A DNA stretch of 64,000 bases from Ruditapes philippinarum (lineage: Eukaryota). Below, piece by piece: positions 482-55,059 of this stretch. The translations under genes and the position numbers were made by a program. The stretch is taken from positions 372,001 through 436,000 of the forward strand of contig NW_026860247.1 in the NCBI RefSeq assembly GCF_026571515.1, given 5' to 3'. Under the pieces are notes generated by a model that searched no databases, was not told the DNA's origin, and saw only the letters and a program-made list of their open reading frames with translations. Within the stretch, counting starts at the first letter, position 1. Every line of letters starts with the position of its first letter.

Positions 482-3400
482 CTTAAATACCAATAGGTAA
501 ATCTTTTTCAAGTATTTGTACTTTATATGACTCATTAATGTCGTTTTAAAGTGTATGGTTTCAAATAATGCTCATGTCTATGGGTCAGTTGTACTTAATA
601 AAACAACTGATATAATTAATATTCGTATCTATTTCATTGTGATCTAATGCTAATAATATACATTTGCATGTAGATAAATCTTTTAGTTATCGAAACTAAA
701 ACGAATAAACCATTCAGTTTTAAGAAGGCGAAGAGACAAGCTGAATACTGAGTAGTGAAGTTCGTCATAGTTATTTTATTAGAAATAATAATAAAATTTA
801 GACAAAATGTATTATTATAATAATTATTATTAATATTATTAATCGAAAATAAATACCTTCTGTTGTACTTAAAGCCTGTAGTTTATCAAGCGCTTCTCTT
901 GCACGAGGACTTCCGCCCAGGTTTAGGACATAAGCAATAATTGCCAGTTCATATACGTCTGTTGTCAACGGTAACTGATCTTCCAAAAAGCGCATTGCCA
1001 AGGCGACGCTGTTATTTATTTGACTGTCGACCTAAATAGATAGATTTTGATATGGAACAACTTATTTTGTATACATATATTTGTTTCCTTACACGTTTGC
1101 AAAATACGGTTTAATTTATTTCTTTAATTATCTCGGGGATTTACGTTTTTTTTTCCACTGAATATTGCGTCTTTATACAAGTAAATATCTATCCTAGACT
1201 TTCAAAATATTATAATACATGTTCTTTATTTTTCAAATAACCTAGCAAAGTTTGGCTTTTCAGCAGAAACATTCTCAGTTGACCATAGCAAATAATTTCA
1301 TTACTTTCTTGTATATATTAACCATCTTTGAGACTGGAAGATAATAGTTTTAACAGGAATACTCACCCCTTCTACAACACGAGCTTCCAACAATGCAGCT
1401 AGTACAAAAGCAGTAAGAGAACGTTCGCCGGCTGTTGATCCTCCCTGAAATATGATAATATGATTTCTATAAATAAAGAGACAAATCACGACTACTTATT
1501 CACTAAATCTACTCATTCCTTTTAAATTGCTGGACAATGTGCTCTCCAAACTGACTGATTTTCACTATTAATCGTAAAAGAGCAACGTAAATAATCACTT
1601 AAAATAGAGAAAAATAGAATCTTTAAAAGAACACCCAAACCGACAATATTGAAACTGTTGAAGGCTCAGTTTGATTGAGCCTGTCCATGGACGGTACTGA
1701 AAAGTGCAAGTGACCGTCCACGCCCCTAGTACCGGCTTAAGCAGAATTCAACATTCAGAATTTAACCCATGTTCGTAAATACTCTGCCAGTAAGCAAATT
1801 GTATCAAAATAATTGCCAAACAAATTTAACAATAAACTTTTCTATGGTCTTAATTATTCCTTCCACATGTTTTTGAAATTTATGCGTCAACACAGATCTA
1901 GCACCATATAACAATTGTAATAATCAAAGCTATATAAATTAATAAAAAATATTTTGTATGACGGCGTTTCTTGTTTTAGACATAGTCCCGTACTTTGTTT
2001 ATTATTCGTTATTACAGCTGTCATATAAATATATAACAATAAATATGTCATATGAATACAGTACCTGCATTTCCTTATGAAGAACGCGACCGGGTTCCTT
2101 GAACGTGCCGTTAGTATTTTGATTTTTAATGATCCATGAAACAGTTTTCTTAATGACTTCATCATCAACAAAAATGTATGGCTTTGCCTGTACAAATGAT
2201 TTCAAGACAAATGCAGACAACCTGAAATATATGAAACATCATAATCGATTTAAATATACAATGGGCTATGAACAATATCGAGCAAATATGTTGAATTTAA
2301 ATTATAGATTTGATTTATTTTTGGTCGTGGTATATTTTTCATAGCATTCTGTCTTTAAAATCACTTATATAATCAATGCAACTGTATGTTAAGAAATAAA
2401 TACATAGGATATATGTAGAATAAAAATAAAGTTTTCAAAATATCCCTTTTATTTCCTACCATAAAGGATTGCAAATAAAAATAGTAAAACATCTTTAGAA
2501 ATATTAATATACTGTGACAAGATAATACTCCATTTTAATGCGATAATATATACAGAACAAAGAGCCTACCACATGCTTCCAGAATCGTCATTCTTTCCAA
2601 AGGCACTGAATGATCCATCCCCATGCTGATACGTCAACTCACGCTGATAACCTAAAGTTAAAAACACAAAATTAAAATAAACAGCCATTCATATGCAATA
2701 AGAATTATAACAGAAAACCTAATAAAATAGTAAATATCTGTTCTTTACATGCAGAATGCCATTAATGTAAATCTTATACGCACGGCAATGTAAAACTTTA
2801 ATGCCTCATTTAATTATGTACTACCATTACGTTTTAAAAGACTAGAAACAAAGAAAGTCTACAAACAAAATTATAATAATAAGAATGATGATGATGCTGA
2901 TAACAATATTAATATTCAAAAATTACAGACACTCTAGAATGTCACTGAGCTAATTTTCTAGAGAGAATTCAGATCAAATCAAGTAATTTACCTTTTATCA
3001 TGAAGTTTTTAGATTTTTCAAATGTTCCCATGTCTAAGTTGTTTGTAGCTTCGAGGTATTCAGTAATGAAGATGTTTGGAGCAAAATTAAGCATGTTTTG
3101 TTCTCCACAACCATAAGGCATTTTCAGGAGAGAGTCCAATCCATTGATGCTAGGTCCCATCAGATCTCCTGAAATTGTTTAAATGGTTATATTTTACTTT
3201 CTTTCACATTCCTTTACTTAGGGACCAAATACTGCTACGTAACCCTGTGCTAGGGGACATGGACGGTTGCCTGCATGAACCAATCAAACCCAGTCTGTAA
3301 AATTCTTCATTTTTGCCGTTTTTGGCGATCTTTAGGAATTATGTTTTCTCTATTTTAGACACAATTTTGCATGCCTAGCATTTTTCTACTTTAGAATACT

Positions 3401-6400
3401 AAAAACTCTCTATGTTCCTGAGGTGTGTTGTTAAGAATTGGTATATAACTCAATTTGCATGACAACGAAACAATCAAATTTTGACATGTTGCTAGTGTAG
3501 AATCTAAAAAGCAATACCTGCACATGTTTCCTTATTTCAATAAATAATTTATTATGAGTTATATAAAATGGTTTAAAATGAATAATATAGATTTATATTA
3601 TGTTGCTTATTTTATATATTCATTTTTATGTTGATTACAAAAAACCCACACAACATTTGATATATGTTTTATGCTTACCAACAACAGTGACTATGACACG
3701 TTCAGATCCAGGCACAGTGGCAGCCGGGAATGATATTGGAATTACGGTGCTGAAATCTGGGGTCTGCTTCAGGTTGATTAAAGTTGGGATGTTGTATTCA
3801 TGTGGCGTACCTTCAGGCTAAACAGATATAAGCGGAAAATATTAGATATTGAACAAAGAATAAGAGTTTACAAAGTATATATATGCCATACATTCGATGA
3901 AAACACGAAGTTAACTTGCTTTGTAAGATTTTATACTTGATCACTATCGAGAAACATTGATAATAAAGACTTTTATATGATAACGACTTTATGATATCAA
4001 ACAATTAGTCAATTGTTGCATTTTCCAATTATTGCGTGTCATTCTTGCATATACGTGAAAATAACATGAATAATCGAAATCGCCTCTTCGCCGACAATAC
4101 GTTTGCAATTTACAGCTTGTTTTTCGTCGGCATCAACAACTTTGTATAATCACAAGATGTGTTAATTTTAGGATGATTTACTGATATGATGATAAGAGAA
4201 TTTTCCCCGATTATATTTAAAGTATCTAAACACGCCATTCAATGTATCGGTAGCATTGTGTTACCGCAGATGAATGTGTAGATTGATTAATAAAATATTC
4301 CAAGGACTAGTCCTCCACCAATTTTTTTGACACTTATAACCTGTACAACTTGTTTTTCACTGGCATCTTTAGCATATTAAGAATGAGCATGAGATTGAAT
4401 TTTGACCTGCCCAAACCTTTTAATGTGCAGTTGGATATAAGATATTCTACGGACTAATCCGCCGTCAATATTTTGATATTTACCTTTACAAGAAGTTGTT
4501 TTTCAATGGCATCAGCAGCATATAAAGATTGCGCATGAGCTTGAATTTTGATATGTCCAATCTTCTTAGGAATGATCGGGAAATACACAGCTGCGGCACC
4601 ATTTGGCTCAATCTAAGAACAAGATCGAATAAGTCTTTGATAAATTCATACAAAATTTTATTAAATACAATAAACTATTAATATTTTTTAAAAGTGTTTT
4701 AAAGCAAATGCATTAGAATGCTAACTGCTATGGGCCCTTTCGTATTTCGGTAATTAATTTGCTGTAAATAAATTGGCTTATGTGTGTAATAATTGAAACA
4801 TAGACTATAGATTAATTTCATTATTTTTAATGTTGGGGTTGTCTTAATCATTTTTTATAAAATGACAAATTATTACATTATTAAATTTTATTATCCCAAA
4901 ATAAAAAAACACTTTGAAATTTAAAGGGTTTTTATTTCTTTAAACATTTAATATTTCAAAATTAAAATTAACTGACGAAAAAATTTTAAAAAAATAGGAC
5001 TGTTAAAGGGGTAAAAAAAACGTGCCCCTACCCGGAAATTTTTTAAAAAGGGAAATATAAAAAATTTGGGCCCCTTTTCCCCAAACCCTTTTTTTTAAAA
5101 TTTTTGTGCAATCATTCTCAAATCTTAAATACCTTCACCCCAAAATCTCTCTCAATCCTAACATTGCTGAAATATTTAAGCTTTTTCCACCACGATTTTA
5201 TGATAATTATCTAATCCTTTGGAGGTTTTTCTTTGTAGCGCAAAAGTCTAAATTATGCTCTGAAAGGAAATTATTTATTAATAAAAAATTTACTATATTT
5301 ATATTTATTTATAAATATTTTAATTTGTTAGATAAACAGAAAAAAGAAATTTTAAAGATTAAAGCTTCAAATTCAATGTCATTGCGAAAAAATTTTCAAA
5401 GCGTGGAAATCACCCCTTATTGCCAGATAAACCAAAAAAAAAAAAAGGGTCAAATTTAGAACATTACGTATAATTTGAAAGCTATATTAAAATACTTATA
5501 AGAATCTATGCCAACCCCAAATATCTCTCTACCAAAATTCACCCTACAGCTCCGGCTTAATTTTGAAAGTAAGTATTTTAAGTACGTACTTTCATTATTA
5601 TTCACTAGTTCACCATCTAAGTTGCTGGTTTTTACTCGAAGAGTTCTTGAACCAATTGATAGATCCCTACTCTGACCTTTTATTTAAATAACAATATTTT
5701 TAACCACCAAACATTTTTGGCATGTTGTTTCCGTGCTTAACAAAATGTAGATTAATTTCATTCCATTGTCTAACTCTTTAAGAATTTTAACAATTATTAG
5801 GGATCTAGCATAAAGTCGTTTTAAGTGTTAACTTACGAATATTCGGAAAGGACTGTAATTGAAGATATTTGCTTGTAGTATAACTTTTTCACCTCGTACA
5901 ACGGAATATGGCATATGAAGGCTCACGAAAAACGGCATGAAGGTTGTTAACTGTAAACATAAAAAAATAAGTAGTAACAATGAGCGTATTCATAGCATAC
6001 TGTAATTTCAGTTAAACAACTACTTTCATATGAGACGTTTGTACCTAAAACCTGCATATCGTATATGTAATTCAAATTAAAGAAACTTGTCAATAATTCA
6101 AATCATTTTTAATAGTAGTTACCAATAAACTAGTAATAAAACCAAATATAATAAAAAAAATACATGTACATGTACACGAAAAGCATAAATTTGAAATTTA
6201 CCAAAACACAAAGATCTAAAACTCGTTCTTTGAAACCAAAACTAGATGTTTTTAAAACCCAAAGATTTTAATTCATACAAATTTTCACTCTCCCTTTACT
6301 TTAGTCAAAATGGCTGCTTTTAAAAACTAAAGGTTTCCTTTGCTGAAAGATTCTTTTAATTTCCAAAAAACCCAAATTATTTCCCCACCCCTGAACGGGG

Positions 6401-9400
6401 AAATTGGGCGATCCACGATTTTATTGGGGTCCCCGGCCCCAGTGTCTTCCAAAAAACAAAATGTTCCATTTATTTCTGTACCCCCAAAATTTAAAACCTA
6501 CAAAATTTTACTTATATCTTTAAATGTACCAAAATTTCTTTCAAAATAAAACTAATGAAATTTTTTTTTGATTATTCTTTTCTTTCAATAAAAGGAAATA
6601 ATTAAAAGTTTTTACCTTTTTACAATGCCCAAATTTAAAAATGTTAAAATGGGCCCAAAACACCAAATTAAAAATTTCTTTTAGATTTTTTCTTTGAATT
6701 TTAGGTATACAAAGATCATTTACATTTTTCGTGACAAAAAATGGGTTACTTTTATATGAAAAAAAACGTACAAGCTTTTTTGTTTATTTTCCAAACCCAA
6801 AGTTTCCGGGGGAATTACTTTTTCCCGGACCCCCTTTTTTGGGCTTAGCAAATTTTAAAACCCCAATTTGTTGCAAACCGATTTACTACGCAACATTAAA
6901 AGGGAATTTTTTGAATTTCCCTTTTGGATACCTTTTTCCAGCCTCATGTAAAAACAACATAATCCCCGTCGAAATAGATATACACTTTTCCCCCAAATTT
7001 AAACAATTTCTTCAATTAAAAAGAAATTTGGAAAAAAATTTTGTGGGAATAACATAAGAGAGTGCAAGATAACAATGGGGTTTGGGAACACAAAGTGAAT
7101 GAAAATGAGCGGGAAACAACAGCAACCAATTGGTACAAGATATTGATGATCACGACAGAACAAACAGAAGCATGGACCAACAAACATACGGGGAATATTG
7201 TGACCGCCACATCCAAGTCTCTGGAAACAGTTTTCTAACTCGTGTAGCTTTTTTAAATTGCTTCATCTCCGGAGCAGGGGCTGGACCTGCACCTGCGGCT
7301 GCAAAAGCAACCCTTCCTCCAAAACCACCACCACGAGCCATCATCATTGGCATCGGACCAGACCACGCTAAGACACAATGATAGATATGCCCAAATATAA
7401 ACATGATTAAGATATACTGGTATATGGTTTTCCGATATAACTAGGTTGAATTATACTGGAATCATACTACACAATGCTGAAAAATATTAAAAAAAGGAAA
7501 AAAAAAAGTTTCAAATATATACATGTATGGCGTAAAATTGAAAAATGAAACACATATCAAAATACAAACGTAAAAAATTCACATATTTTTCTTTGTTTTA
7601 AAAATTTAAATTTTCTTTTTTGCAATGAAAGCTTTTATATTGTCGTCAATTTCAAAAAAAGAATATTTCTTTCGAAAAAAATAATTTAATAATGTATGAA
7701 TTTTTGCTAAATTAACTAATTGGTTTCCAATGAAAAAGGAATGGGCAAGCAGCCCAAAGGAGGGCTTTTTAAAAAAATTTAAAAAAAAAAGAAAATTTTT
7801 CCCCCAAAAAGGGTTTTCTTAAATAAAAAATGGTTTCAAATTTCAGTATTTTTTTTAATTTTAAAATTTAAAACCCAACATTCCAGCGTTACACAAGTTA
7901 TCAATATTTTGCTTCAAAGGATCAACGCCAATAGTATAGCCGTCATTTACGTTTCAAAGTTCATTTATACTAATTGATTAACAAAATACTCTGACTTACG
8001 TTCTTGATGGTCATATACAAGAGCATCGGTAATGTAGGCCAATCCAGCATTCTGTTAATGAAATGAAAAAAGTTAACAACAATTCTGGAAAAGTGGAGAT
8101 CCCAAAACGGTCTTTTTCAATATCTCTCAGGTCCTCTACTTCAAGCTAAAGTGACATTATGTTCATTCTTTCGTTGTCGGTTACAGCTTAATTTACTTTA
8201 AATTTCTAAAGATTTACTATTATAATGGCCATTGACCATTATAATAAAAATAGTTAGAATAAAATATTAAAACTGCCTAAAATATAAAAGATTGCCCCAC
8301 ATTTTGTATCAATTGAACATTACAAATTCTGAACGATATTTATAGAATTTTCCAAGGGTCGCGTAGTTTATAAGTAGAATACAAATTTCATAAGAATTAT
8401 GACAAGATGTAAAGTGTTCTGAAACTTTACCTGTGCAGTCACCATTTTCACTTAGATGGGCATAATGGCAGTATCAAATCATTATTATTTTCTATTTTCA
8501 AATGTTTTTTCACATTATATTTAAACGTTTGTTATAACATCTAAATGAACTATATAACAGATAGACCTATATTGAATACAGATTGAATATTTTTAAAATA
8601 CGAAATTCTTCAACTTAAACTTACATTGAATACATCATGGGCGTCGTCGCCACGAGCTGGCATTGGCCATCTCCAACAAAACCAATCACATGGGAAGTGA
8701 CCGCCACCATTTGTATCATACTTTTGCAATTCTTTTGTGACGTCATCTTTTGTTACATCGTTTCCAGATTTCAGAAGGAGTACACTCTTGTCAACGGCCA
8801 GCACATTAACCTTTGATCCAGGATCTGCATTAACCGTCAACCTGATTTTATCGGCAGGCCGGACTTTAGGCGAGTCGAAGCTGATATTCACCTAGAAAAC
8901 GATTAATTGTTAACACTGCAGTTACACGTGCGAGTGAAAAAGACGAATTCATGAATCGAATATTTCTTTAAAATGCTCTACATTACTCAAAATATACATT
9001 TAAGAACTGCTTTATTTTTTAAATCGGAATCTCAATGAAACGTATGAGGTATCAGTAAAGAAAGTATGGGCTTATTCTTAAATTTCATGCATAAAATACT
9101 ACATACCCGATTTTCAAAAATGCCATCAACATTAAAGCTAAGCCCATCAGCGACGACTTCACCATCGGGTCGGACGTAGTACAGCATAAGTTTAGCTTTA
9201 GGTGCCATATCTGCCGTGACAGGGAAATTTAATATCCCTGGTGTTAGATCAACGTTACCAGACGCAACGCTCTTTCCTTTTGACAAAACCTGTACAGTGA
9301 ATAAAAAGGTTTGTTTTAAATCGAGAGTTTGCGATCTAACAATAAGAAACATATATTTCAAATGCTAAAATTCTAGACAATTATAGAGAAAGGAAGGTGT

Positions 9401-18400: not shown

Positions 18401-20769
18401 ATTTCGAGAAAAGGGTGATCCATCGGAAGCAATAAAAGCAACGACATTACATGGAAATTTTTGAATCTGTTAATGTGTGATAATGAAAAATTGCAACATC
18501 CCACACTGCAAATCAAGTTTAGAATATTCACCTTTTTAATATTGTTCATAACTTTCGAACGATTTAACCTTTTCTATTTATTTTCATATAAATTACATCG
18601 TTACTCTGCTTTTCTAAACATTATAAAACATTTCATATTCCAGCCTTTAAGACATATATATTATATTCACCAGTTTGTCCAGGCTTGTATATAGCTTTGT
18701 CCGTCTGTATGAAGATCGAATGACTTTTGTCGTCATACGAAAGACTTGTAGAGTTTTCAAAAGTCAAGCCTCCTTGTCCAACAATTCTAAGTTTATATCT
18801 ACCTTCCGGTAAATTTTCTGGTATCTGAAGAAAATAATTATGCCAGTCTTGACAAAAAATAACAGATTAAAATAACAGAAATAGATTTACTGTAGTTTGC
18901 ACTTGACAGTACCGTCCATGAACAGACTCAGTCAGACCGAGCCTACAATATTTTCAATTTTGCCGCTTTGGACCTTCTTGAGAGATTCCTATTTTTTTGT
19001 TTTACCAGTAAGGATGAAGTACGGTTAATACACCAGTATTGAGCACAGCACAATCAACAAACAAGAGCAAACAAATCAACATTCGTGCAAAATATAATAA
19101 CGTTTAGAAGGATCAGGTCAAAAACCAAATCATTGAAGTGAAGATTTTTTACTAAAATTGAGTGTATCAGAAATGTTGTAAACCGAGATTAAACAAAAAG
19201 TACGATACTGTATAACTGTATAAAAATAAGTGATGAATTTTTAGAAAATGGCATTTAAAACTGTCAGGGGAAAGTCGTTGTTTCGTTGAGAAAGAAACTT
19301 TACACTTGCTCAGTACTGCTTTGTTCCAGTAGCTTCCTATACAATTGAACTAAAATAAATTCTATATAAACCAAATCGTTGATATGGCAATTTTATATAC
19401 CCTTAAGACTTTTTTGGTAGTGAGGAAGTTAGCTTACGGAACGTCGGTGGTTCGTTTGTGCCTGAAATATTGCACAGAAGGTCACTTGAAGTCTCCCTCC
19501 ACCAGTTAAGCTGGAAAGTCGACATATGGCCTATAATGTATTGGTGCGACGTAAAACCCAACTGATAACTTACTTCTTTTTTAACGACTGATCAATAAAA
19601 AACATTACAAAAATATAAACTGACTAACCGGAAGGACAATATCTTGAGCTTCTTTGGTAAACAAGACAGCCCTTGTTGTGACAATTGGTTCTGGTATCGG
19701 TGTTGTTGTTGTTGTAGTAGGAGCGGATGTCGTGGGAGGTTCCGGGAGACCATTGCCATTCCTTATCAGCAGCCTAGGCATTGGTCTTGGTCTAAATCCT
19801 ACCTCTACTTCTATCTCTTTTTCTAAGGTAACTGTAACTTCAACAGGGGTCAATGGGTCAACTAGGAGCGAACTTTGAATTGTAAGGTTGTGACTAGGTC
19901 GTATGGTCTTTGGTGATAAAAATAGATAAGTACTGAAAAAGAATCAATACGTTTTTCAATAGAAGTATGATGTAGCGATTGTTCATTTATCTTTAAATGA
20001 ACTTTACGTTAAAGATGATGTATGTATTCCACGATTGGGTTAAATGCCTCTAACAATGGAAAAAACATAACATAAAAAATCATGTTCCACTACGAAAATA
20101 AAACAAAAAACATAGTAGTGGACATACCTATGCTTTGCTCCATGTGTGTCTTAATTAATTGATAAAATGTATGTTTACATGCGGATCATTTATTTAAACG
20201 TCACTGTCAAGTTAAGCGAACAGAAAGGCATACTGACGGCGTGTTATAATATGAATCATTGAATTACCCATTCATGTTCTTCACAAGAGGTATTTAATTT
20301 AGGAATAAATAGTATCTGGATTGCACGTATCCTTGATCTTTATTTATTTTTTATTTTTATATGTGCTGTCCTTTTTTGCTTGTATATAGCAAACATATAG
20401 TATATACCACTGAAAAATTGTTCTTATACTATCATTACTTTTAAACGGAAATGTGACCTTATTATTTTTTCCCATCGAAACACCGGAGTATTTTTGTTGC
20501 TATAAAAACATTCGCAAAAAAGCTGATGGACAAAAATGCATTCTTTATTTACCCTAGAATCTGACAAATGAATTAATTGTATAGTTCTGAAATACCAAAT
20601 TATATCATTTATAACAAGAGTACGCATTGCACGTGACAGCCGTCATATAGCACTTAAGCATGTACTTAACTAGTAAAAAGGTTACTTACTTTTCTGATGA
20701 TACGTATGAAACTGCGAAAGTAAAACATAAAAGCAGGTATCCCACAAGGGAATCCTTTCTCCTCCCCAT
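273..20769 (-). CDS. CD109: Thioester-containing protein (TEP / CD109-like, alpha-2-macroglobulin superfamily), spliced, ~28 coding exons visible, 3' end continues beyond the left edge
   Basis: The clean exons join in frame with GT-AG sites and carry family motifs: [131 protein letters not shown]. The symbol means CD109-like only; the C-terminus (GPI signal) is outside the window, so CD109 versus secreted TEP is unresolved. Confidence 0.95.
857..1031 (-). CDS. TEP coding exon 27
   Basis: [20 protein letters not shown]...[12 protein letters not shown]...STTE(G). Confidence 0.93.
1367..1444 (-). CDS. TEP coding exon 26
   Basis: [26 protein letters not shown]. Confidence 0.93.
1601..1755 (+). 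repeat. Dispersed double-hairpin repeat (best copy of ~10 in the window)
   Basis: aggctca-gtttgat-tgagcct and tggacggt...accgtcca; other copies at 3247(-), 18897(-), 27925(+), 31305(+), 31972(-), 34008(-), 46740(+), 54445(+) and 56175(+). Confidence 0.85.
2065..2221 (-). CDS. TEP coding exon 25: catalytic His (codon 2077-2079)
   Basis: [19 protein letters not shown]...[15 protein letters not shown]. Confidence 0.95.
2570..2651 (-). CDS. TEP coding exon 24
   Basis: [28 protein letters not shown]. Confidence 0.95.
2992..3168 (-). CDS. TEP coding exon 23: thioester motif GCGEQ (3098-3112)
   Basis: [32 protein letters not shown]. Confidence 0.97.
3679..3817 (-). CDS. TEP coding exon 22
   Basis: [18 protein letters not shown]...[12 protein letters not shown](G). 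Confidence 0.93.
4484..4612 (-). CDS. TEP coding exon 21
   Basis: [43 protein letters not shown]. Confidence 0.93.
5133..5259 (-). CDS. TEP coding exon 20 (partly corrupted)
   Basis: 3' part reads [15 protein letters not shown]|gtattt; tttcag acceptor near 5260; 5' part frameshifted within the low-quality patch. Confidence 0.5.
5837..5950 (-). CDS. TEP coding exon 19
   Basis: [38 protein letters not shown]. Confidence 0.94.
6338..6475 (-). CDS. TEP coding exon 18 (VPDTITSW exon), corrupted by sequencing-type indels
   Basis: gacactggggccggggaccccaataaaatcgtggatcgcc resembles DTVPDTITSWIA; tacag acceptor; ends TCA GCA AAG (SAK) before LTTFMPFF; the family requires this exon here. Confidence 0.7.
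6772..6970 (-). CDS. Putative alternative bait-region exon 17b (sequence corrupted by homopolymer indels)
   Basis: Minus strand reads gctaagcccaaaaaagggggtccgggaaaaagtaattcccccggaaactttgggtttggaaaat, which collapses to about AKPKRVRKYFPETWLWN, followed by a gtacgt donor at 6770-6771. The acceptor position is uncertain. Confidence 0.6.
7190..7367 (-). CDS. TEP coding exon 17a: bait-like variable region plus [12 protein letters not shown]
   Basis: [58 protein letters not shown]; cttag acceptor, gtatgt donor. Confidence 0.9.
8000..8051 (-). CDS. TEP coding exon 16
   Basis: [17 protein letters not shown](P); phase 1 donor. Confidence 0.9.
8625..8891 (-). CDS. TEP coding exon 15
   Basis: VNISFD...[23 protein letters not shown]...DAHDVFN. 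Confidence 0.93.
9107..9289 (-). CDS. TEP coding exon 14
   Basis: VLSKGKSV...[35 protein letters not shown]. Confidence 0.93.
9659..9724 (-). CDS. TEP coding exon 13
   Basis: [22 protein letters not shown]. Confidence 0.88.
10209..10307 (-). CDS. TEP coding exon 12
   Basis: [33 protein letters not shown] (SPS..FMQL motif). Confidence 0.9.
10545..10885 (-). mobile_element. SINE fragments (family B tail ~10545-10640; family A body ~10759-10885)
   Basis: ggtcatatggcgc.gaaacag is shared with 50170-50245 and with the reverse complement of 55760-55820; caggtgcccc...aaagaatccaaagt is shared with family A. Confidence 0.6.
11140..11315 (-). CDS. TEP coding exon 11
   Basis: (G)[58 protein letters not shown]. 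Confidence 0.88.
11345..11680. repeat. Minisatellite (~21-bp catgatttaataca... units with a ~105-bp higher-order repeat)
   Basis: Recurrent catgattt; 11460-11565 repeats as 11566-11680. Confidence 0.75.
11692..11949 (-). mobile_element. tRNA-derived SINE, family A
   Basis: Minus strand starts ggggcgtccgt with an A-box-like stretch and B box ggttcggaatccc; homologous to 55060-55308, 19408-19563 and 10759-10885. Confidence 0.8.
12171..12327 (-). CDS. TEP coding exon 10 (poly-Thr insert)
   Basis: [30 protein letters not shown]14-SPLIMNGTN; AG/GT, phase 0 to phase 1. Confidence 0.88.
12733..12960 (-). CDS. TEP coding exon 9
   Basis: [12 protein letters not shown]...[10 protein letters not shown]...[12 protein letters not shown]. 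Confidence 0.92.
13228..13351 (-). CDS. TEP coding exon 8
   Basis: [41 protein letters not shown]. Confidence 0.92.
13412..13690. repeat. Imperfect (GAT/AAT)n microsatellite, intronic
   Basis: gatgatgataatgatgat runs. Confidence 0.9.
13847..13931 (-). CDS. TEP coding exon 7
   Basis: [27 protein letters not shown](T). Confidence 0.92.
14666..14705 (-). CDS. TEP coding exon 6
   Basis: [13 protein letters not shown](V). Confidence 0.9.
14843..15080. mobile_element. Palindromic MITE, copy 1 (intronic)
   Basis: ~100-bp inverted arms (gcgccatgacaaaaccaacataatgggtttgcgaccagcatggatccagacc...) around a ~35-bp spacer. Confidence 0.9.
15264..15401 (-). CDS. TEP coding exon 5
   Basis: [11 protein letters not shown]...[20 protein letters not shown] (MG2 motif). 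Confidence 0.92.
15775..16100. repeat. Diverged tandem duplication, 2 x ~165 bp
   Basis: ttttgaccg.aattgaat...caagat.atccgcaaat...gaatgcaat..gccgaaaattt occurs twice. Confidence 0.8.
16823..17062. mobile_element. Palindromic MITE, copy 2 (opposite orientation)
   Basis: Same arms as copy 1; the spacer is the reverse complement of the copy 1 spacer. Confidence 0.9.
17088..17158 (-). CDS. TEP coding exon 4
   Basis: (V)[23 protein letters not shown]; phases consistent. Confidence 0.9.
18671..18824 (-). CDS. TEP coding exon 3
   Basis: [51 protein letters not shown]. Confidence 0.93.
19408..19563 (+). mobile_element. SINE family A, 5'-truncated
   Basis: agcttacggaacgtcggtggttc...gctggaaagtc...gcgacgtaaaacccaac is the reverse complement of the family A body and tail. 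Confidence 0.7.
19629..19933 (-). CDS. TEP coding exon 2 (MG1 with Pro/Thr-rich insert)
   Basis: [19 protein letters not shown]...[20 protein letters not shown]...DIVLP; AG/GT boundaries. Confidence 0.9.
20690..20769 (-). CDS. TEP coding exon 1: signal peptide [26 protein letters not shown](N)
   Basis: ATG at 20769 just after acceptor ttacag (20775-20776); basic N-region plus hydrophobic core; gtaagt donor; phase 2 matches the next exon. Confidence 0.85.
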
Positions 20770-52596: not shown

Positions 52597-53545
52597 TTTG
52601 ACCTCTAAGTGTGACCTTGAACTTGGAGGTAAGGGTGCAGTTGTTATGCATGACATATCGTCTTATTATTGAAACTATTTGTGCCAAGTATTTTCAAAAT
52701 CCCTTGAACTATGAAGAAGTTATAGATCAGACACAAAATATACCCTATAACATACTTTGTAAATCTTTGACCTGTAAGTGTGACCTTGACCTTGGAGGTA
52801 GGGACACAGGTGTTACGCACGACTTATCATCTTATCATCGTGACTATTTGTGCCAAGTATTTTCAAAATCCCTTGATCTATGAAGTTATGGACAGGACAC
52901 AAAATATACCATATAACAGACTGTTAACCTTTGACCTCTTAGTGTGACCTTGACCTTGGAGGTAGGGGTGCAGGTGTTGTACTTGACATATTGTCTTCTT
53001 ATAATGACTATTTGTGTCTAGTTATTTTAAAATCCCGAAAAAGATCTTGATCGGACACAAAATATACCCTAAAAAAGAACATGTTAATTTTTGACCTCTA
53101 AGTGTGACCTTGAACTTGGAAGTAGGGATGCAGGTGTTGTGCATAACATATTGGCTTATTATATTGACAAAATCTTTCGATCTATGAAAAAGGTATGGAC
53201 CGGACACAAAATATACCCTATAACAGACTATGTTAAACTTTGACCTCCAAGTGTGAACTTGGAGGTAGGTGACCGATTGTTGCGCATGACACATCGTCTC
53301 ATTATTGTGAACAATTGTGGCAAGTATTTACAAAATCCCTTCAAAGATAAGAAAGTTATTGACCGGACACGACAGATACCCTCAAATAGACAATGTTGAC
53401 CTTGAATGAGCAAGTGCGACCTTGACCTTGGGGGTAGGGGTCTGGTTTTTGCGCATGACACATCTTCTTATTATAACAAACATTTGTGCCAAGTTATTTC
53501 AGATTCCTTTGATAAATGACAAAGTTATGGACCGGACACGCAAGT
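52597..53545 (+). repeat. Tandem array of ~6 units of ~165 bp (tttgacctctaagtgtgaccttgaccttggaggtaggg...), probably the core of a non-autonomous element starting near 52388
   Basis: Unit starts near 52597, 52766, 52930, 53090, 53239 and 53395. Confidence 0.9.
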
Positions 53546-55059
53546 GTGACTGCAATCTCCATGTAATTTTAATGATTTTATTGTGTCCGAGGAGGGATCA
53601 CTTTTTCCAGATATTTAGGAAACACACATACAAAACAACAACACATACACACAAACGAATGCACTCCATCAAAATAAATTGTTAGATATCAATGTTAATG
53701 ATACGAGTTCATTTTAAATATTAAACGAACAGCTCATTTGCATATCATATTGTAATAATAAAGATAGGAAACTGTATGCAAATTTTATTCCACAGGGCAT
53801 AAATTCATGAACATATTTGTATACTTCGGGGCGTAATTACACGTGAATATTTTAATATTTTTCATGTCAATTATGTAGAATAGTTTATAGAATTATGAAT
53901 ATATTACAACATTTGCATTTTTATATAATTTAGATGGAGGCTAACCTGGTGACGATTATTACAATGCATTACATCGTTGACATTAAGTATGTACAACTAT
54001 GTTGCTTATACTCAATGCAGAGCCAGAAACTTAACAGAAATTTTATGTCATTTTGTATCATTTTTATCTCCAAAACTTTCTTGGAAATTACATTTTTACA
54101 TGTTTTAAAACTTTAATTATTGCATATCAGACAAGATTATCTACCGTTTCGGCGGTGCTAGAAAACCCCGACTTACACCCCCATGTAAGACAAGTCGCGT
54201 GCTTTAAATAAGGTATTTGCCGCGCGCCTTTTCTGAATGAATTGCGTTTTTAGGATGACGTCATTATACCGTTATGAATGAAGTTTGTAAGTTTAAACGC
54301 TACTACAAGAAAACAGTGCGTAATGAAAATATCAGTTTTCGTAATTTCTGTTCCGAGAATAAATGACAATTAATATGCAAGTTAAGGTTAAGATCAAATC
54401 AGGAAGAAAACGTTCAAGGAATATTACCGCCTCACTATCCGTGAAAGATATTTTAAAAAACCCAAAACGGCAAAATGTACGGTCTGATTGAGTCTGTTCA
54501 TGGATATGTCGCATTTAAGGTTTCATAAAGAAAATGATGCGAATGGTCCCGAAATAAAATAATACGTTTGTCCTAAAAGAGAAAACAATGGGAGGAACTA
54601 TATAAAACGGAATTTGGAAAGGGCGCCAAAGGTTATGAAGCCTGTATATCACATACAAACGGTCACAAAGGGTAACAAAAAATTAATGTTAACTTGACAT
54701 TGAAAATAAGTATTTAAGGCAAAGAGAACATAGACTTATTCAAGTTAACATTGTATTTATAAATACCAGTTAACTTTCCATAACAATCTGTGAAATGATT
54801 GGAATATTTTATATAGTCGTTCCTTATTCTAAGTTCATCTAAAATGTTTCTCAGACTGAAAACGGTTATTTTCCGCAAACAAAACTTTACGGCATAGAAA
54901 GGACCTTAAAATCTCAATTTAGATAAGTAGTTAAAGTAATCTATATGTTAATATCCAATTATTAGTCAAAATAGATAAATTTACAAATGATATTTAAATT
55001 GACATAAACGATAATAATAAGTCTTTTAATAAATTATCATTTTTCCCTTCTTTTCATTC

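What the first reader, a model, noticed from the sequence alone, without database searches (positions are those of the whole stretch)
6772..7367. Hidden second bait-region exon: candidate mutually exclusive splicing of the TEP variable region
Seen: the clean exon 7190-7367 encodes a Gly/Ala/Pro/Met-rich bait-like segment ending [17 protein letters not shown]. About 220 bp further along the transcript, an error-ridden segment of similar size reads ...gctaagcccaaaaaagggggtccgggaaaaagtaattcccccggaaactttgggtttggaaaat...|gtacgt. After homopolymer collapse this gives about AKPKRVRKYFPETWLWN with its own donor site and an unrelated 5' portion. Established: FPETWxW occurs once per TEP chain, and mutually exclusive exons diversify this region in Drosophila Tep2 and the scallop Chlamys farreri TEP. 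Inference: the gene makes at least two isoforms with different protease-sensitive baits, an innate-immune diversification cassette that ORF-based annotation would miss. Here the conserved FPETW motif is inside the swapped exon.
Basis: partly seen in the sequence, partly recalled or inferred. Interest (0 to 1): 0.85.

Follow-up and report, generated by a model that had tools for sequence, protein, structure and literature searches.

The report
Second alternative bait exon, clam CD109/TEP
A Manila clam immune thioester-protein (CD109/TEP-like) gene does carry a second, badly assembled copy of its variable "bait" exon that matches an annotated alternative exon in a related clam, but this kind of exon swapping is already well known in mollusc TEP genes.

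Summary
Exon 17a (7190-7367, minus strand) is a real, expressed exon. The stretch 6772-~6970 lies in a homopolymer-inflated, unpolished patch and holds a second bait + FPETW exon ("17b") with a GTACGT donor.

- **Not chance.** Frameshift-tolerant alignment makes it the best non-self hit in the window (0 of 400 shuffles reach it).
- **Ortholog.** The hard clam Mercenaria gene (73% identical) has two RefSeq isoforms that differ only in this exon. One exon matches 17a. The other aligns along its whole length to 6961-6771 (score 85; null 32.5 ± 4.6; 0 of 1000).
- **Paralogs.** In clean sequence of the same genome (which fits the Ruditapes philippinarum long-read assembly), paralogs have 2 or 7 tandem exons of this type. 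For two of these loci, RefSeq isoforms each carry one of the exons.
- **Frame breaks.** Those in 17b are no denser than in the neighbouring exon 18, which is expressed.
- **Not shown.** No RNA evidence that 17b is used in this species.

Swapped bait exons are already described for Tep2, CfTEP, BgTEP2 and BgCD109, so this is a new member of a known kind. A first-stage note elsewhere in this genome (s1-804151) flags the same architecture.

The parts
8000..8051 (-). Constitutive exon 16 (..[17 protein letters not shown]), upstream neighbour of the swapped exon
   Evidence: RNA-contig joints 8051->8625 and 7367->8000; 81% identical to Mercenaria P0168 residues 710-725
7190..7367 (-). Exon 17a: Gly/Ala/Pro/Met-rich bait plus ..[18 protein letters not shown]; 178 nt (1 mod 3), phase 1
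   Evidence: Joint 7367->8000 and a loose end at 7190 that continues into exon 18. Orthologous to the Mercenaria isoform X2 exon.
6971..7189 (-). Pyrimidine-rich intron between 17a and 17b (length inflated by assembly errors below about 7050)
   Evidence: Purine fraction 0.28-0.39 and AT skew -0.3 to -0.46, like the 63-nt A-B intron of the C2438 paralog
6772..6970 (-). Exon 17b: second bait + FPETW exon, frame broken by homopolymer inflation. The approximate reading ends ..FAKPKRVRKVFPETWVWK... The 5' boundary is approximate and no AG acceptor is legible.
   Evidence: The Mercenaria X1-specific exon aligns to 6961->6771: score 85, null 32.5 ± 4.6, 0 of 1000, 28 of 58 identical. The exon-specific part alone scores 45, null 23.5 ± 3.5, 0 of 1000. 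It is the best non-self hit in the window. GC and purine content rise as in exon B of C2438.
6766..6771 (-). GTACGT donor of exon 17b
   Evidence: Read directly. It sits 19 nt after W-x-W, against 17 nt in 17a and in 12 clean paralogous exons.
6340..6475 (-). Constitutive exon 18 (..NNGTVVFEDT..PD.IKSW..), in the same unpolished patch; 3' end approximate
   Evidence: The RNA loose end at 7190 gives its true first 30 bases, which match 6475 downward with about 4 extra reference letters. Alignment to homologs needs 3 frameshifts and 2 gaps in 88 nt.
5836..5952 (-). Constitutive exon 19 (A2M domain)
   Evidence: RNA contigs with loose ends at 5836 and 5952; Pfam PF00207, E = 5e-10

Best explanation
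The window holds most of a CD109/iTEP-type thioester-containing protein gene on the minus strand, from about 20.9 kb to beyond base 1. The genome fits the PacBio-based Ruditapes philippinarum (Manila clam) assembly.

After constitutive exon 16, the gene has two tandem alternative exons, 17a (7190-7367) and 17b (about 6970-6772). Each encodes a different protease-sensitive bait stretch followed by the conserved ..RVRK-x-FPETW-x-W.. start of the next macroglobulin domain. Each ends in the same splice phase.

One of the two is spliced between exons 16 and 18. Exons of this class are 1 mod 3 in length, so using both or neither shifts the frame, and only one-of-two mRNAs encode the protein. The result is two isoforms with identical bodies and different baits, and so probably different protease or pathogen triggers for thioester activation.

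- Shown here: 17a is used; 17b is homologous to the annotated alternative exon of the Mercenaria ortholog; the architecture recurs in paralogs.
- Inferred: 17b is intact in the real genome, is spliced in this species, and is mutually exclusive with 17a.
- The apparent frame breaks in 17b are assembly errors. A low-coverage PacBio CLR consensus was left unpolished in this patch.
For: - **Gene identity.** Pfam finds A2M_BRD, A2M and TED_complement above their cut-offs, plus an MG2 hit at 31.7 bits, just under its 32.8 cut-off, on single exons. GCGEQ is present in ORF 2972-3178. The gene is collinear with Mercenaria P0168 residues 5-1278 at 73% mean identity.
- **17a is used.** Joints and a loose end in RNA-derived contigs show it.
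- **17b is not chance.** It ranks first in the window. It beats 0 of 400 shuffles with short queries and 0 of 1000 with the Mercenaria X1 exon (z about 11). The exon-specific part alone beats 0 of 1000, whereas 17a scores only 27 against that part.
- **Isoform pairs that differ only in this exon.** Mercenaria; Mya, Pecten and Patella; R. philippinarum C2438 X1/X2; C2261 X1-X7.
- **Splice geometry.** The donor lies 17 nt after W-x-W in all clean exons. All clean exons are 1 mod 3.
- **Error level.** The expressed exon 18 carries 3 frameshifts and 2 gaps per 88 nt.
- **Assembly.** 15,874 contigs and 1.408 Gb. The paper reports 15,908 contigs and 1.409 Gb before 27 were removed, from PacBio RSII at about 25x, wtdbg2 and Hypo.
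- **Literature.** Bait-exon swapping is described in PMC7016707.
Against: - No read or contig was laid on 6713-6926 in any run, so there is no RNA evidence for 17b. The same holds for the expressed exon 18 at 6392-6498, so this is uninformative.
- The only junction seen downstream of 17a goes straight to exon 18.
- No AG acceptor is legible at the expected 5' end; the reference reads ..tttcgacgg...
- The length and frame of 17b cannot be verified.
- No full-length R. philippinarum protein for this gene was found in the protein collections.
- In a whole-window scan, the exon-specific part ranks only second (45 against a background hit of 50).
Confidence: 0.78

Rival explanations
1. 17b is a dead relic. 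It is homologous to the alternative exon of other clams, but in this R. philippinarum gene it has lost its acceptor and/or its frame and is never spliced in.
For: No legible AG acceptor. Eight frameshift moves and 3 gaps are needed over 58 aligned residues. Only the 17a->18 junction was seen. No annotated isoform of this gene was retrieved.
Against: The expressed exon 18, in the same patch, shows a similar density of frame breaks. The C-terminal motif, the donor and its spacing are kept. 28 of 58 residues match Mercenaria despite the errors. Paralogs in the same genome keep both exons intact and annotated.
Confidence: 0.15
2. Assembly artefact: the inflated patch is a mis-joined or uncollapsed piece of the other haplotype or of a paralog, so the gene really has one bait exon.
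For: The genome is about 4% heterozygous and was assembled with wtdbg2 from about 25x CLR reads. The patch is unpolished. A short-read contig aligns only up to 6971 and resumes at 6533.
Against: The region is single-copy in the assembly. 17b is unlike 17a outside the shared motif and matches a different Mercenaria exon. The patch also holds the gene's own exon 18, in the right order. The short-read contig of run X1 is collinear across the patch. The order A, short intron, B is the same as in C2438 and C4942.
Confidence: 0.04
3. Chance resemblance produced by allowing homopolymer edits in A/G-rich junk.
For: Full run-length collapse gives about 25 FPETWxW-like hits in the window. Long Lys-rich queries give high null scores.
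Against: 0 of 400, 0 of 1000 and 0 of 1000 shuffles reach the observed scores. The hit is on the right strand, in the right intron, with the donor at the right distance.
Confidence: 0.01

Closest known systems
Mercenaria mercenaria CD109 antigen-like, RefSeq isoforms X1 (XP_045204949.2) and X2 (XP_045204950.2)
   Same: This is the ortholog: 73% identity over about 1,300 residues. The two isoforms differ only in the exon between ..YNHEEP and GNGTVV... The X2 exon corresponds to 17a and the X1 exon to 17b, and FPETW lies inside both.
   Different: In the clam window the second exon is unannotated and unreadable because of assembly errors. Its N-terminal bait part has diverged: the reading is Lys/Asn-rich where Mercenaria is Met/Asp-rich, though part of this may be error.
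R. philippinarum paralogs: CD109 antigen-like X1/X2 on C2438 (XP_060581968.1 / XP_060581969.1) and X1-X7 on C2261 (XP_060581137-144)
   Same: Same genome and same position in the gene. Tandem bait + FPETW exons with the donor 17 nt after W-x-W; the measured C2438 and C4942 exons are 1 mod 3 in length; one exon per isoform.
   Different: These are clean sequence and already annotated. The arrays have 2 exons (63-nt spacer) and 7 exons. Their bait sequences are unrelated to 17a and 17b.
Published bait-region exon cassettes: Drosophila Tep2 (5), Chlamys farreri CfTEP (6 exons, 7 isoforms), Biomphalaria BgTEP2 (12), BgCD109 (8 predicted), BgA2M (3), shrimp A2M-2
   Same: Mutually exclusive tandem exons encode the hypervariable central region of a thioester protein. 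Conserved residues lie at the C-terminal end of each exon (PMC7016707).
   Different: This is a minimal two-exon version in a different gene lineage. No expression or immune-challenge data exist for it.

Membership tests
Alpha-2-macroglobulin / thioester-containing protein superfamily | Thioester site GCGEQ within a TED domain | tested here: met
   ORF 2972-3178 contains ..PYGCGEQNM... Pfam TED_complement: E = 1e-15, 6e-15 and 4e-6 on three exons.
Alpha-2-macroglobulin / thioester-containing protein superfamily | MG, bait-region and A2M domains in the canonical order | tested here: met
   A2M_BRD (exons at 9035-9364 and 8625-8891) and A2M (5837-5950) above their cut-offs; MG2 (18636-18866) at 31.7 bits, just under its 32.8 cut-off. 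Collinear tblastn with P0168 residues 5-1278.
Alpha-2-macroglobulin / thioester-containing protein superfamily | A single FPETW-x-W motif after the bait region in the mature chain | tested here: met
   Present in 17a. Found once in each full-length homolog in which it was found. The genomic second copy is the alternative exon.
CD109 / iTEP subgroup | Closest relatives are CD109/iTEP-type proteins rather than C3 or A2M | tested here: met
   The best full-length relatives are all named CD109 antigen-like (Mercenaria, Mya, Pecten and others). This rests on names and similarity only; no tree was built.
CD109 / iTEP subgroup | C-terminal features (GPI signal or lack of a C345C domain) | not testable with these tools
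   The 3' end of the gene lies outside the window. I did not fetch it.
Mutually exclusive bait-exon cassette (Tep2 / CfTEP / BgTEP2 type) | Two or more tandem homologous exons at the bait position, on the same strand | tested here: met
   17a and 17b
Mutually exclusive bait-exon cassette (Tep2 / CfTEP / BgTEP2 type) | Same splice phase, and a length that forbids double inclusion or skipping | tested here: inconclusive
   17a is 178 nt (1 mod 3), as are four clean paralogous exons. The length of 17b is unreadable because of inflation. Its donor is present, 19 nt after W-x-W against the expected 17.
Mutually exclusive bait-exon cassette (Tep2 / CfTEP / BgTEP2 type) | Functional acceptor and donor on each exon | tested here: inconclusive
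   The donor GTACGT is present. No AG is legible at the 5' end in the corrupted reference.
Mutually exclusive bait-exon cassette (Tep2 / CfTEP / BgTEP2 type) | Transcripts carry one exon or the other, never both | tested here: inconclusive
   The 16-17a-18 form is shown. Nothing could be laid on 17b or on the control exon 18. The ortholog and paralogs have one-exon-each isoforms.

The most novel reading that the evidence does not exclude
The 17a/17b pair is an old, selectively maintained two-state bait switch that predates the split between Ruditapes and Mercenaria. Similar pairs in other CD109 lineages, such as the basic Lys/Arg-rich exon B shared by clam C2438 and a Mya gene, suggest several ancient A/B pairs. 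The two exons would give chemically distinct baits (hydrophobic Gly/Ala/Met-rich versus charged) that are chosen by tissue or by immune challenge.
Probability: 0.35. Interest if true: 0.4.

Novelty: new member of a known kind. Interest (0 to 1): 0.25.

Why it matters
Swapping the bait exon lets an invertebrate with no antibodies make several versions of a pathogen- or protease-sensing thioester protein from one gene. Showing that this clam gene has such a switch adds one locus to the expanded R. philippinarum CD109/iTEP repertoire (17 genes reported, PMC6831834). It also shows that local assembly errors hide immune-gene isoforms. It is not a new mechanism: the ortholog in Mercenaria and two paralogs in the same genome already carry the equivalent isoforms in RefSeq, and the phenomenon is published for snail, scallop, fly and shrimp.

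Tried and rejected
- **Full homopolymer collapse as a test for FPETW.** Too permissive (about 25 hits per window). Replaced by a frameshift-tolerant alignment with shuffles.
- **60-residue paralog queries.** Lys-rich low complexity inflates the null (51 against 44 ± 5.5; 20 of 150 shuffles). Not used as evidence.
- **DNA alignment of the 17a-17b region to the C2438 A-B region.** Only moderately significant and messy. Treated as weak support.
- **Reads.** Read laying at 80% likeness put nothing on 6713-6926 or on exon 18, and the raw RNA run X23 had depth of only about 1-3 on the gene. This gives no verdict on 17b.
- **17a depth in run X18.** It is 447 against 685-1000 for neighbouring exons. 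That is suggestive of another form, but run X15 does not show it, and divergent alleles could explain it.
- **Fetching a clean short-read contig.** Both metagenome scans came back empty.
- **Second copy in the assembly.** None found.
- **A third cassette exon** in introns 16-18. None above noise.
I repeated it with sequences read from files.
All searches were made exon by exon, by reference.

Full report
**What is there**

The minus strand of the window carries most of a large thioester-containing protein gene.
- Single exons hit Pfam A2M_BRD, A2M and TED_complement above their cut-offs, and MG2 at 31.7 bits, just under its 32.8 cut-off.
- The thioester motif GCGEQ lies in the ORF at 2972-3178.
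- The gene is collinear with residues 5-1278 of a Mercenaria mercenaria 'CD109 antigen-like' protein, from about 20.9 kb down to base 273, at 73% mean identity.

The genome is 1,408,138,951 bases in 15,874 contigs. A paralog's RefSeq protein from Ruditapes philippinarum sits on a contig of 151,226 nt, exactly the length of contig C2261. The long-read Manila clam assembly is described as 15,908 contigs and 1.409 Gb before 27 contaminant contigs were removed. It was built from about 25x PacBio RSII reads with wtdbg2 and polished with Hypo, in a genome of about 4% heterozygosity (PMC9803972). I therefore take the window to be from that assembly. This is an inference from matching numbers.

**Checking the observation**

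- **Error patch.** Mean homopolymer run length is about 2.0 in 6251-7000, against about 1.4 in most of the window. Two further patches lie at 4751-5500 and 7501-8000.
- **Exon 17a (7190-7367) is expressed.** In two runs that behave as RNA (X15, X18), contigs join 7367 to 8000 (depth 210 and 447) and 8051 to 8625. One X15 contig runs off at 7190 into 30 bases that are the true start of exon 18. Read in frame, these bases give ..SP-NNGTVVFEDT.., matching ..SP-GNGTVV.. in Mercenaria. Against these 30 true bases the reference at 6475 has 34 letters, which calibrates the error level.

**Is the second motif chance?**

Collapsing all homopolymers is too generous: about 25 FPETWxW-type hits appear in the window. 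I therefore wrote a protein-to-DNA alignment that allows penalised frameshifts. As queries I used the last 25 or so residues of 17a and of seven paralogous exons.
- The site ending at 6776 is the best hit in both strands of the window after 17a itself (50; next best 43, 43, 41).
- None of 400 run-order shuffles of the intron reaches it (mean 32.5, maximum 49).
- F-P-E-T-W-V-W needs three single-base deletions in runs (C5, G2, T3). These sum to three bases and so restore the frame.
- The donor lies 19 nt after the W-x-W codons. In 17a and in all 12 clean paralogous exons examined it lies exactly 17 nt after them.

**Relatives in the same genome**

A six-frame search of the assembly with the 17a peptide, and then with a paralog exon, found tandem exons of the same kind on the same strand.

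| Contig | Position | Tandem exons | Spacer | RefSeq isoforms |
|---|---|---|---|---|
| C2261 | 34.6-40.7 kb | 7 | – | X1-X7, one exon each |
| C2438 | 51.35-51.9 kb | 2 | 63 nt | X1 and X2, differing by exactly these exons |
| C4942 | 205.4-206.15 kb | 2 | 309 nt | not checked |

Each exon has an open frame, a different bait and a ..R-K-x-FPETW-x-W.. end. The measured exon lengths are 259, 190, 196 and 190 nt, and 178 nt for 17a. All are 1 mod 3, so taking both exons or neither destroys the frame.

**The ortholog**

The closest full-length relative found is the Mercenaria gene. Its 90% cluster holds isoforms X1 and X2, which differ only between ..YNHEEP and GNGTVV...
- The X2 exon ([13 protein letters not shown]...[18 protein letters not shown]) is plainly the counterpart of 17a.
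- The X1 exon (...[39 protein letters not shown]) aligns to window 6961->6771 over residues 4-62 of the 62 used. The score is 85, with 28 of 58 identical, 8 frameshift moves and 3 gaps. The shuffle null is 32.5 ± 4.6, maximum 56, 0 of 1000.
- The part of the X1 exon before the shared RVRK motif alone scores 45 at 6961->6841 (null 23.5 ± 3.5, maximum 40, 0 of 1000). It scores only 27 on 17a. In a whole-window scan this part ranks second (a background hit scores 50), so its weight comes from being collinear and adjacent to the motif.

The same kind of isoform pair is annotated in Mya arenaria, Pecten maximus and Patella vulgata homologs.

**Are the frame breaks decay or error?**

Exon 18 lies in the same patch and is expressed. 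It needs 3 frameshift moves and 2 gaps over 88 nt to align with homologs. The density in 17b is similar. Composition agrees with an exon:
- GC rises to 0.44 at 6880-6801, against 0.16-0.26 in the intron below.
- 6772-6945 has purine fraction 0.61 and AT skew +0.21, like exon B of C2438 (0.63, +0.38).
- The stretch between 17a and 17b is pyrimidine-rich, like the C2438 spacer.

**What is not shown**

- Nothing from any run, DNA included, could be laid on 6713-6926, nor on exon 18 at 6392-6498. The reads therefore say nothing about 17b.
- The raw-read RNA run had depth of only about 1-3 on this gene.
- A short-read DNA contig of run X1 (1,359 nt) spans 7679-6971 and picks up again at 6533.
- No AG acceptor can be read at the expected 5' end (..tttcgacgg..).
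- No full-length R. philippinarum protein for this gene turned up. This fits an annotation damaged by the unpolished patches.
- I built no joined exon model. Every search was made exon by exon, by reference.

**Mechanism**

Shown:
- there are two homologous exons;
- 17a is used;
- the class of exon is 1 mod 3;
- the ortholog and the paralogs make one-exon-each isoforms.

Inferred:
- in this clam, exon 16 is spliced to either 17a or 17b and then to exon 18;
- this gives two proteins with different bait segments ahead of the invariant FPETW start of the next domain;
- double or zero inclusion is removed by the frameshift.

The bait is the protease-exposed segment whose cleavage activates the thioester in this family (established knowledge, restated in PMC7016707). 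Two baits therefore plausibly mean two sets of triggering proteases.

**Comparison and novelty**

Mutually exclusive bait exons are published for Drosophila Tep2 (5), scallop CfTEP (6 exons, 7 isoforms), Biomphalaria BgTEP2 (12), BgCD109 (8 predicted), BgA2M (3) and a shrimp A2M. Conserved residues at the C-terminal end of each exon are noted there (PMC7016707). The CD109/iTEP family is known to be expanded to 17 genes in this clam (PMC6831834). A first-stage note of this scan on another piece of the same genome (s1-804151) describes the same architecture.

The finding is thus a correct reading of a hard-to-read stretch and a new member of a known kind.

**Verdict**

- Observation: confirmed.
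- Interpretation: supported by orthology and paralogy; not yet by transcripts of this species.
- Interest: low to moderate.

Noticed in passing
G000:C2261:34623-40739 (loci L011, L014), minus strand: Seven tandem bait + FPETWLW exons in a paralogous CD109-like gene. Each has its donor 17 nt after W-x-W. They correspond one-to-one to RefSeq isoforms X1-X7 (XP_060581137-144).
   Followed up: yes
G000:C2438:51348-51999 (L012) and C2438:5684-5932 (L013): A two-exon array in which only a 63-nt intron separates exon A from a strongly basic (Lys/Arg-rich) exon B. That is short enough that steric hindrance could enforce exclusivity. A near-identical copy of exon B lies 46 kb away on the same contig, which may be a tandem gene copy or an uncollapsed duplicate. 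A Mya arenaria isoform pair (P0006/P0155) has a similar basic exon ending ..RKHFPETW.
   Followed up: partly
G000:C4942:205404-206148 (L017), minus strand: Another two-exon array (196 and 190 nt, 309-nt spacer). Its baits are Cys-rich (..CSPGSKYSCECPPPFC..), unlike the Gly/Ala/Met-rich or basic baits of the other genes.
   Followed up: partly
window 4751-5500, 6251-7050, 7501-8000: Three homopolymer-inflated, evidently unpolished patches inside one gene. They hit exon 18, 17b and probably the exon near 5.0 kb. They probably explain why no full-length protein model of this gene was found.
   Followed up: partly
window 7190-7367: The bait exon 17a is polymorphic. RNA contigs of run X15 carry variants at 7262, 7280, 7285 and a synonymous change at the second exon base. 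A JGI metagenome fragment (P0001) is 94% identical, with several bait substitutions.
   Followed up: no
window 7141-7367 against 5857-5963 and 8639-8950: In run X18 the contig depth of 17a (447) is well below that of the neighbouring constitutive exons (about 685-1000). In X15 it is not. This could reflect use of another exon or a divergent allele; it remains unexplained.
   Followed up: no
window 8104-8531: The intron between exons 15 and 16 holds a high-copy repeat. Contig depth reaches about 500 in the DNA run and about 55 in raw RNA reads, with many loose ends at 8247-8289 and 8426-8467.
   Followed up: no
window 52600-53700, both strands: Repeated ORF-like units (MTL.LEV..Q.L..TY.LII.TICAKYFQNPL..) occur several times in tandem. 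This looks like a repetitive element, unrelated to the TEP gene.
   Followed up: no
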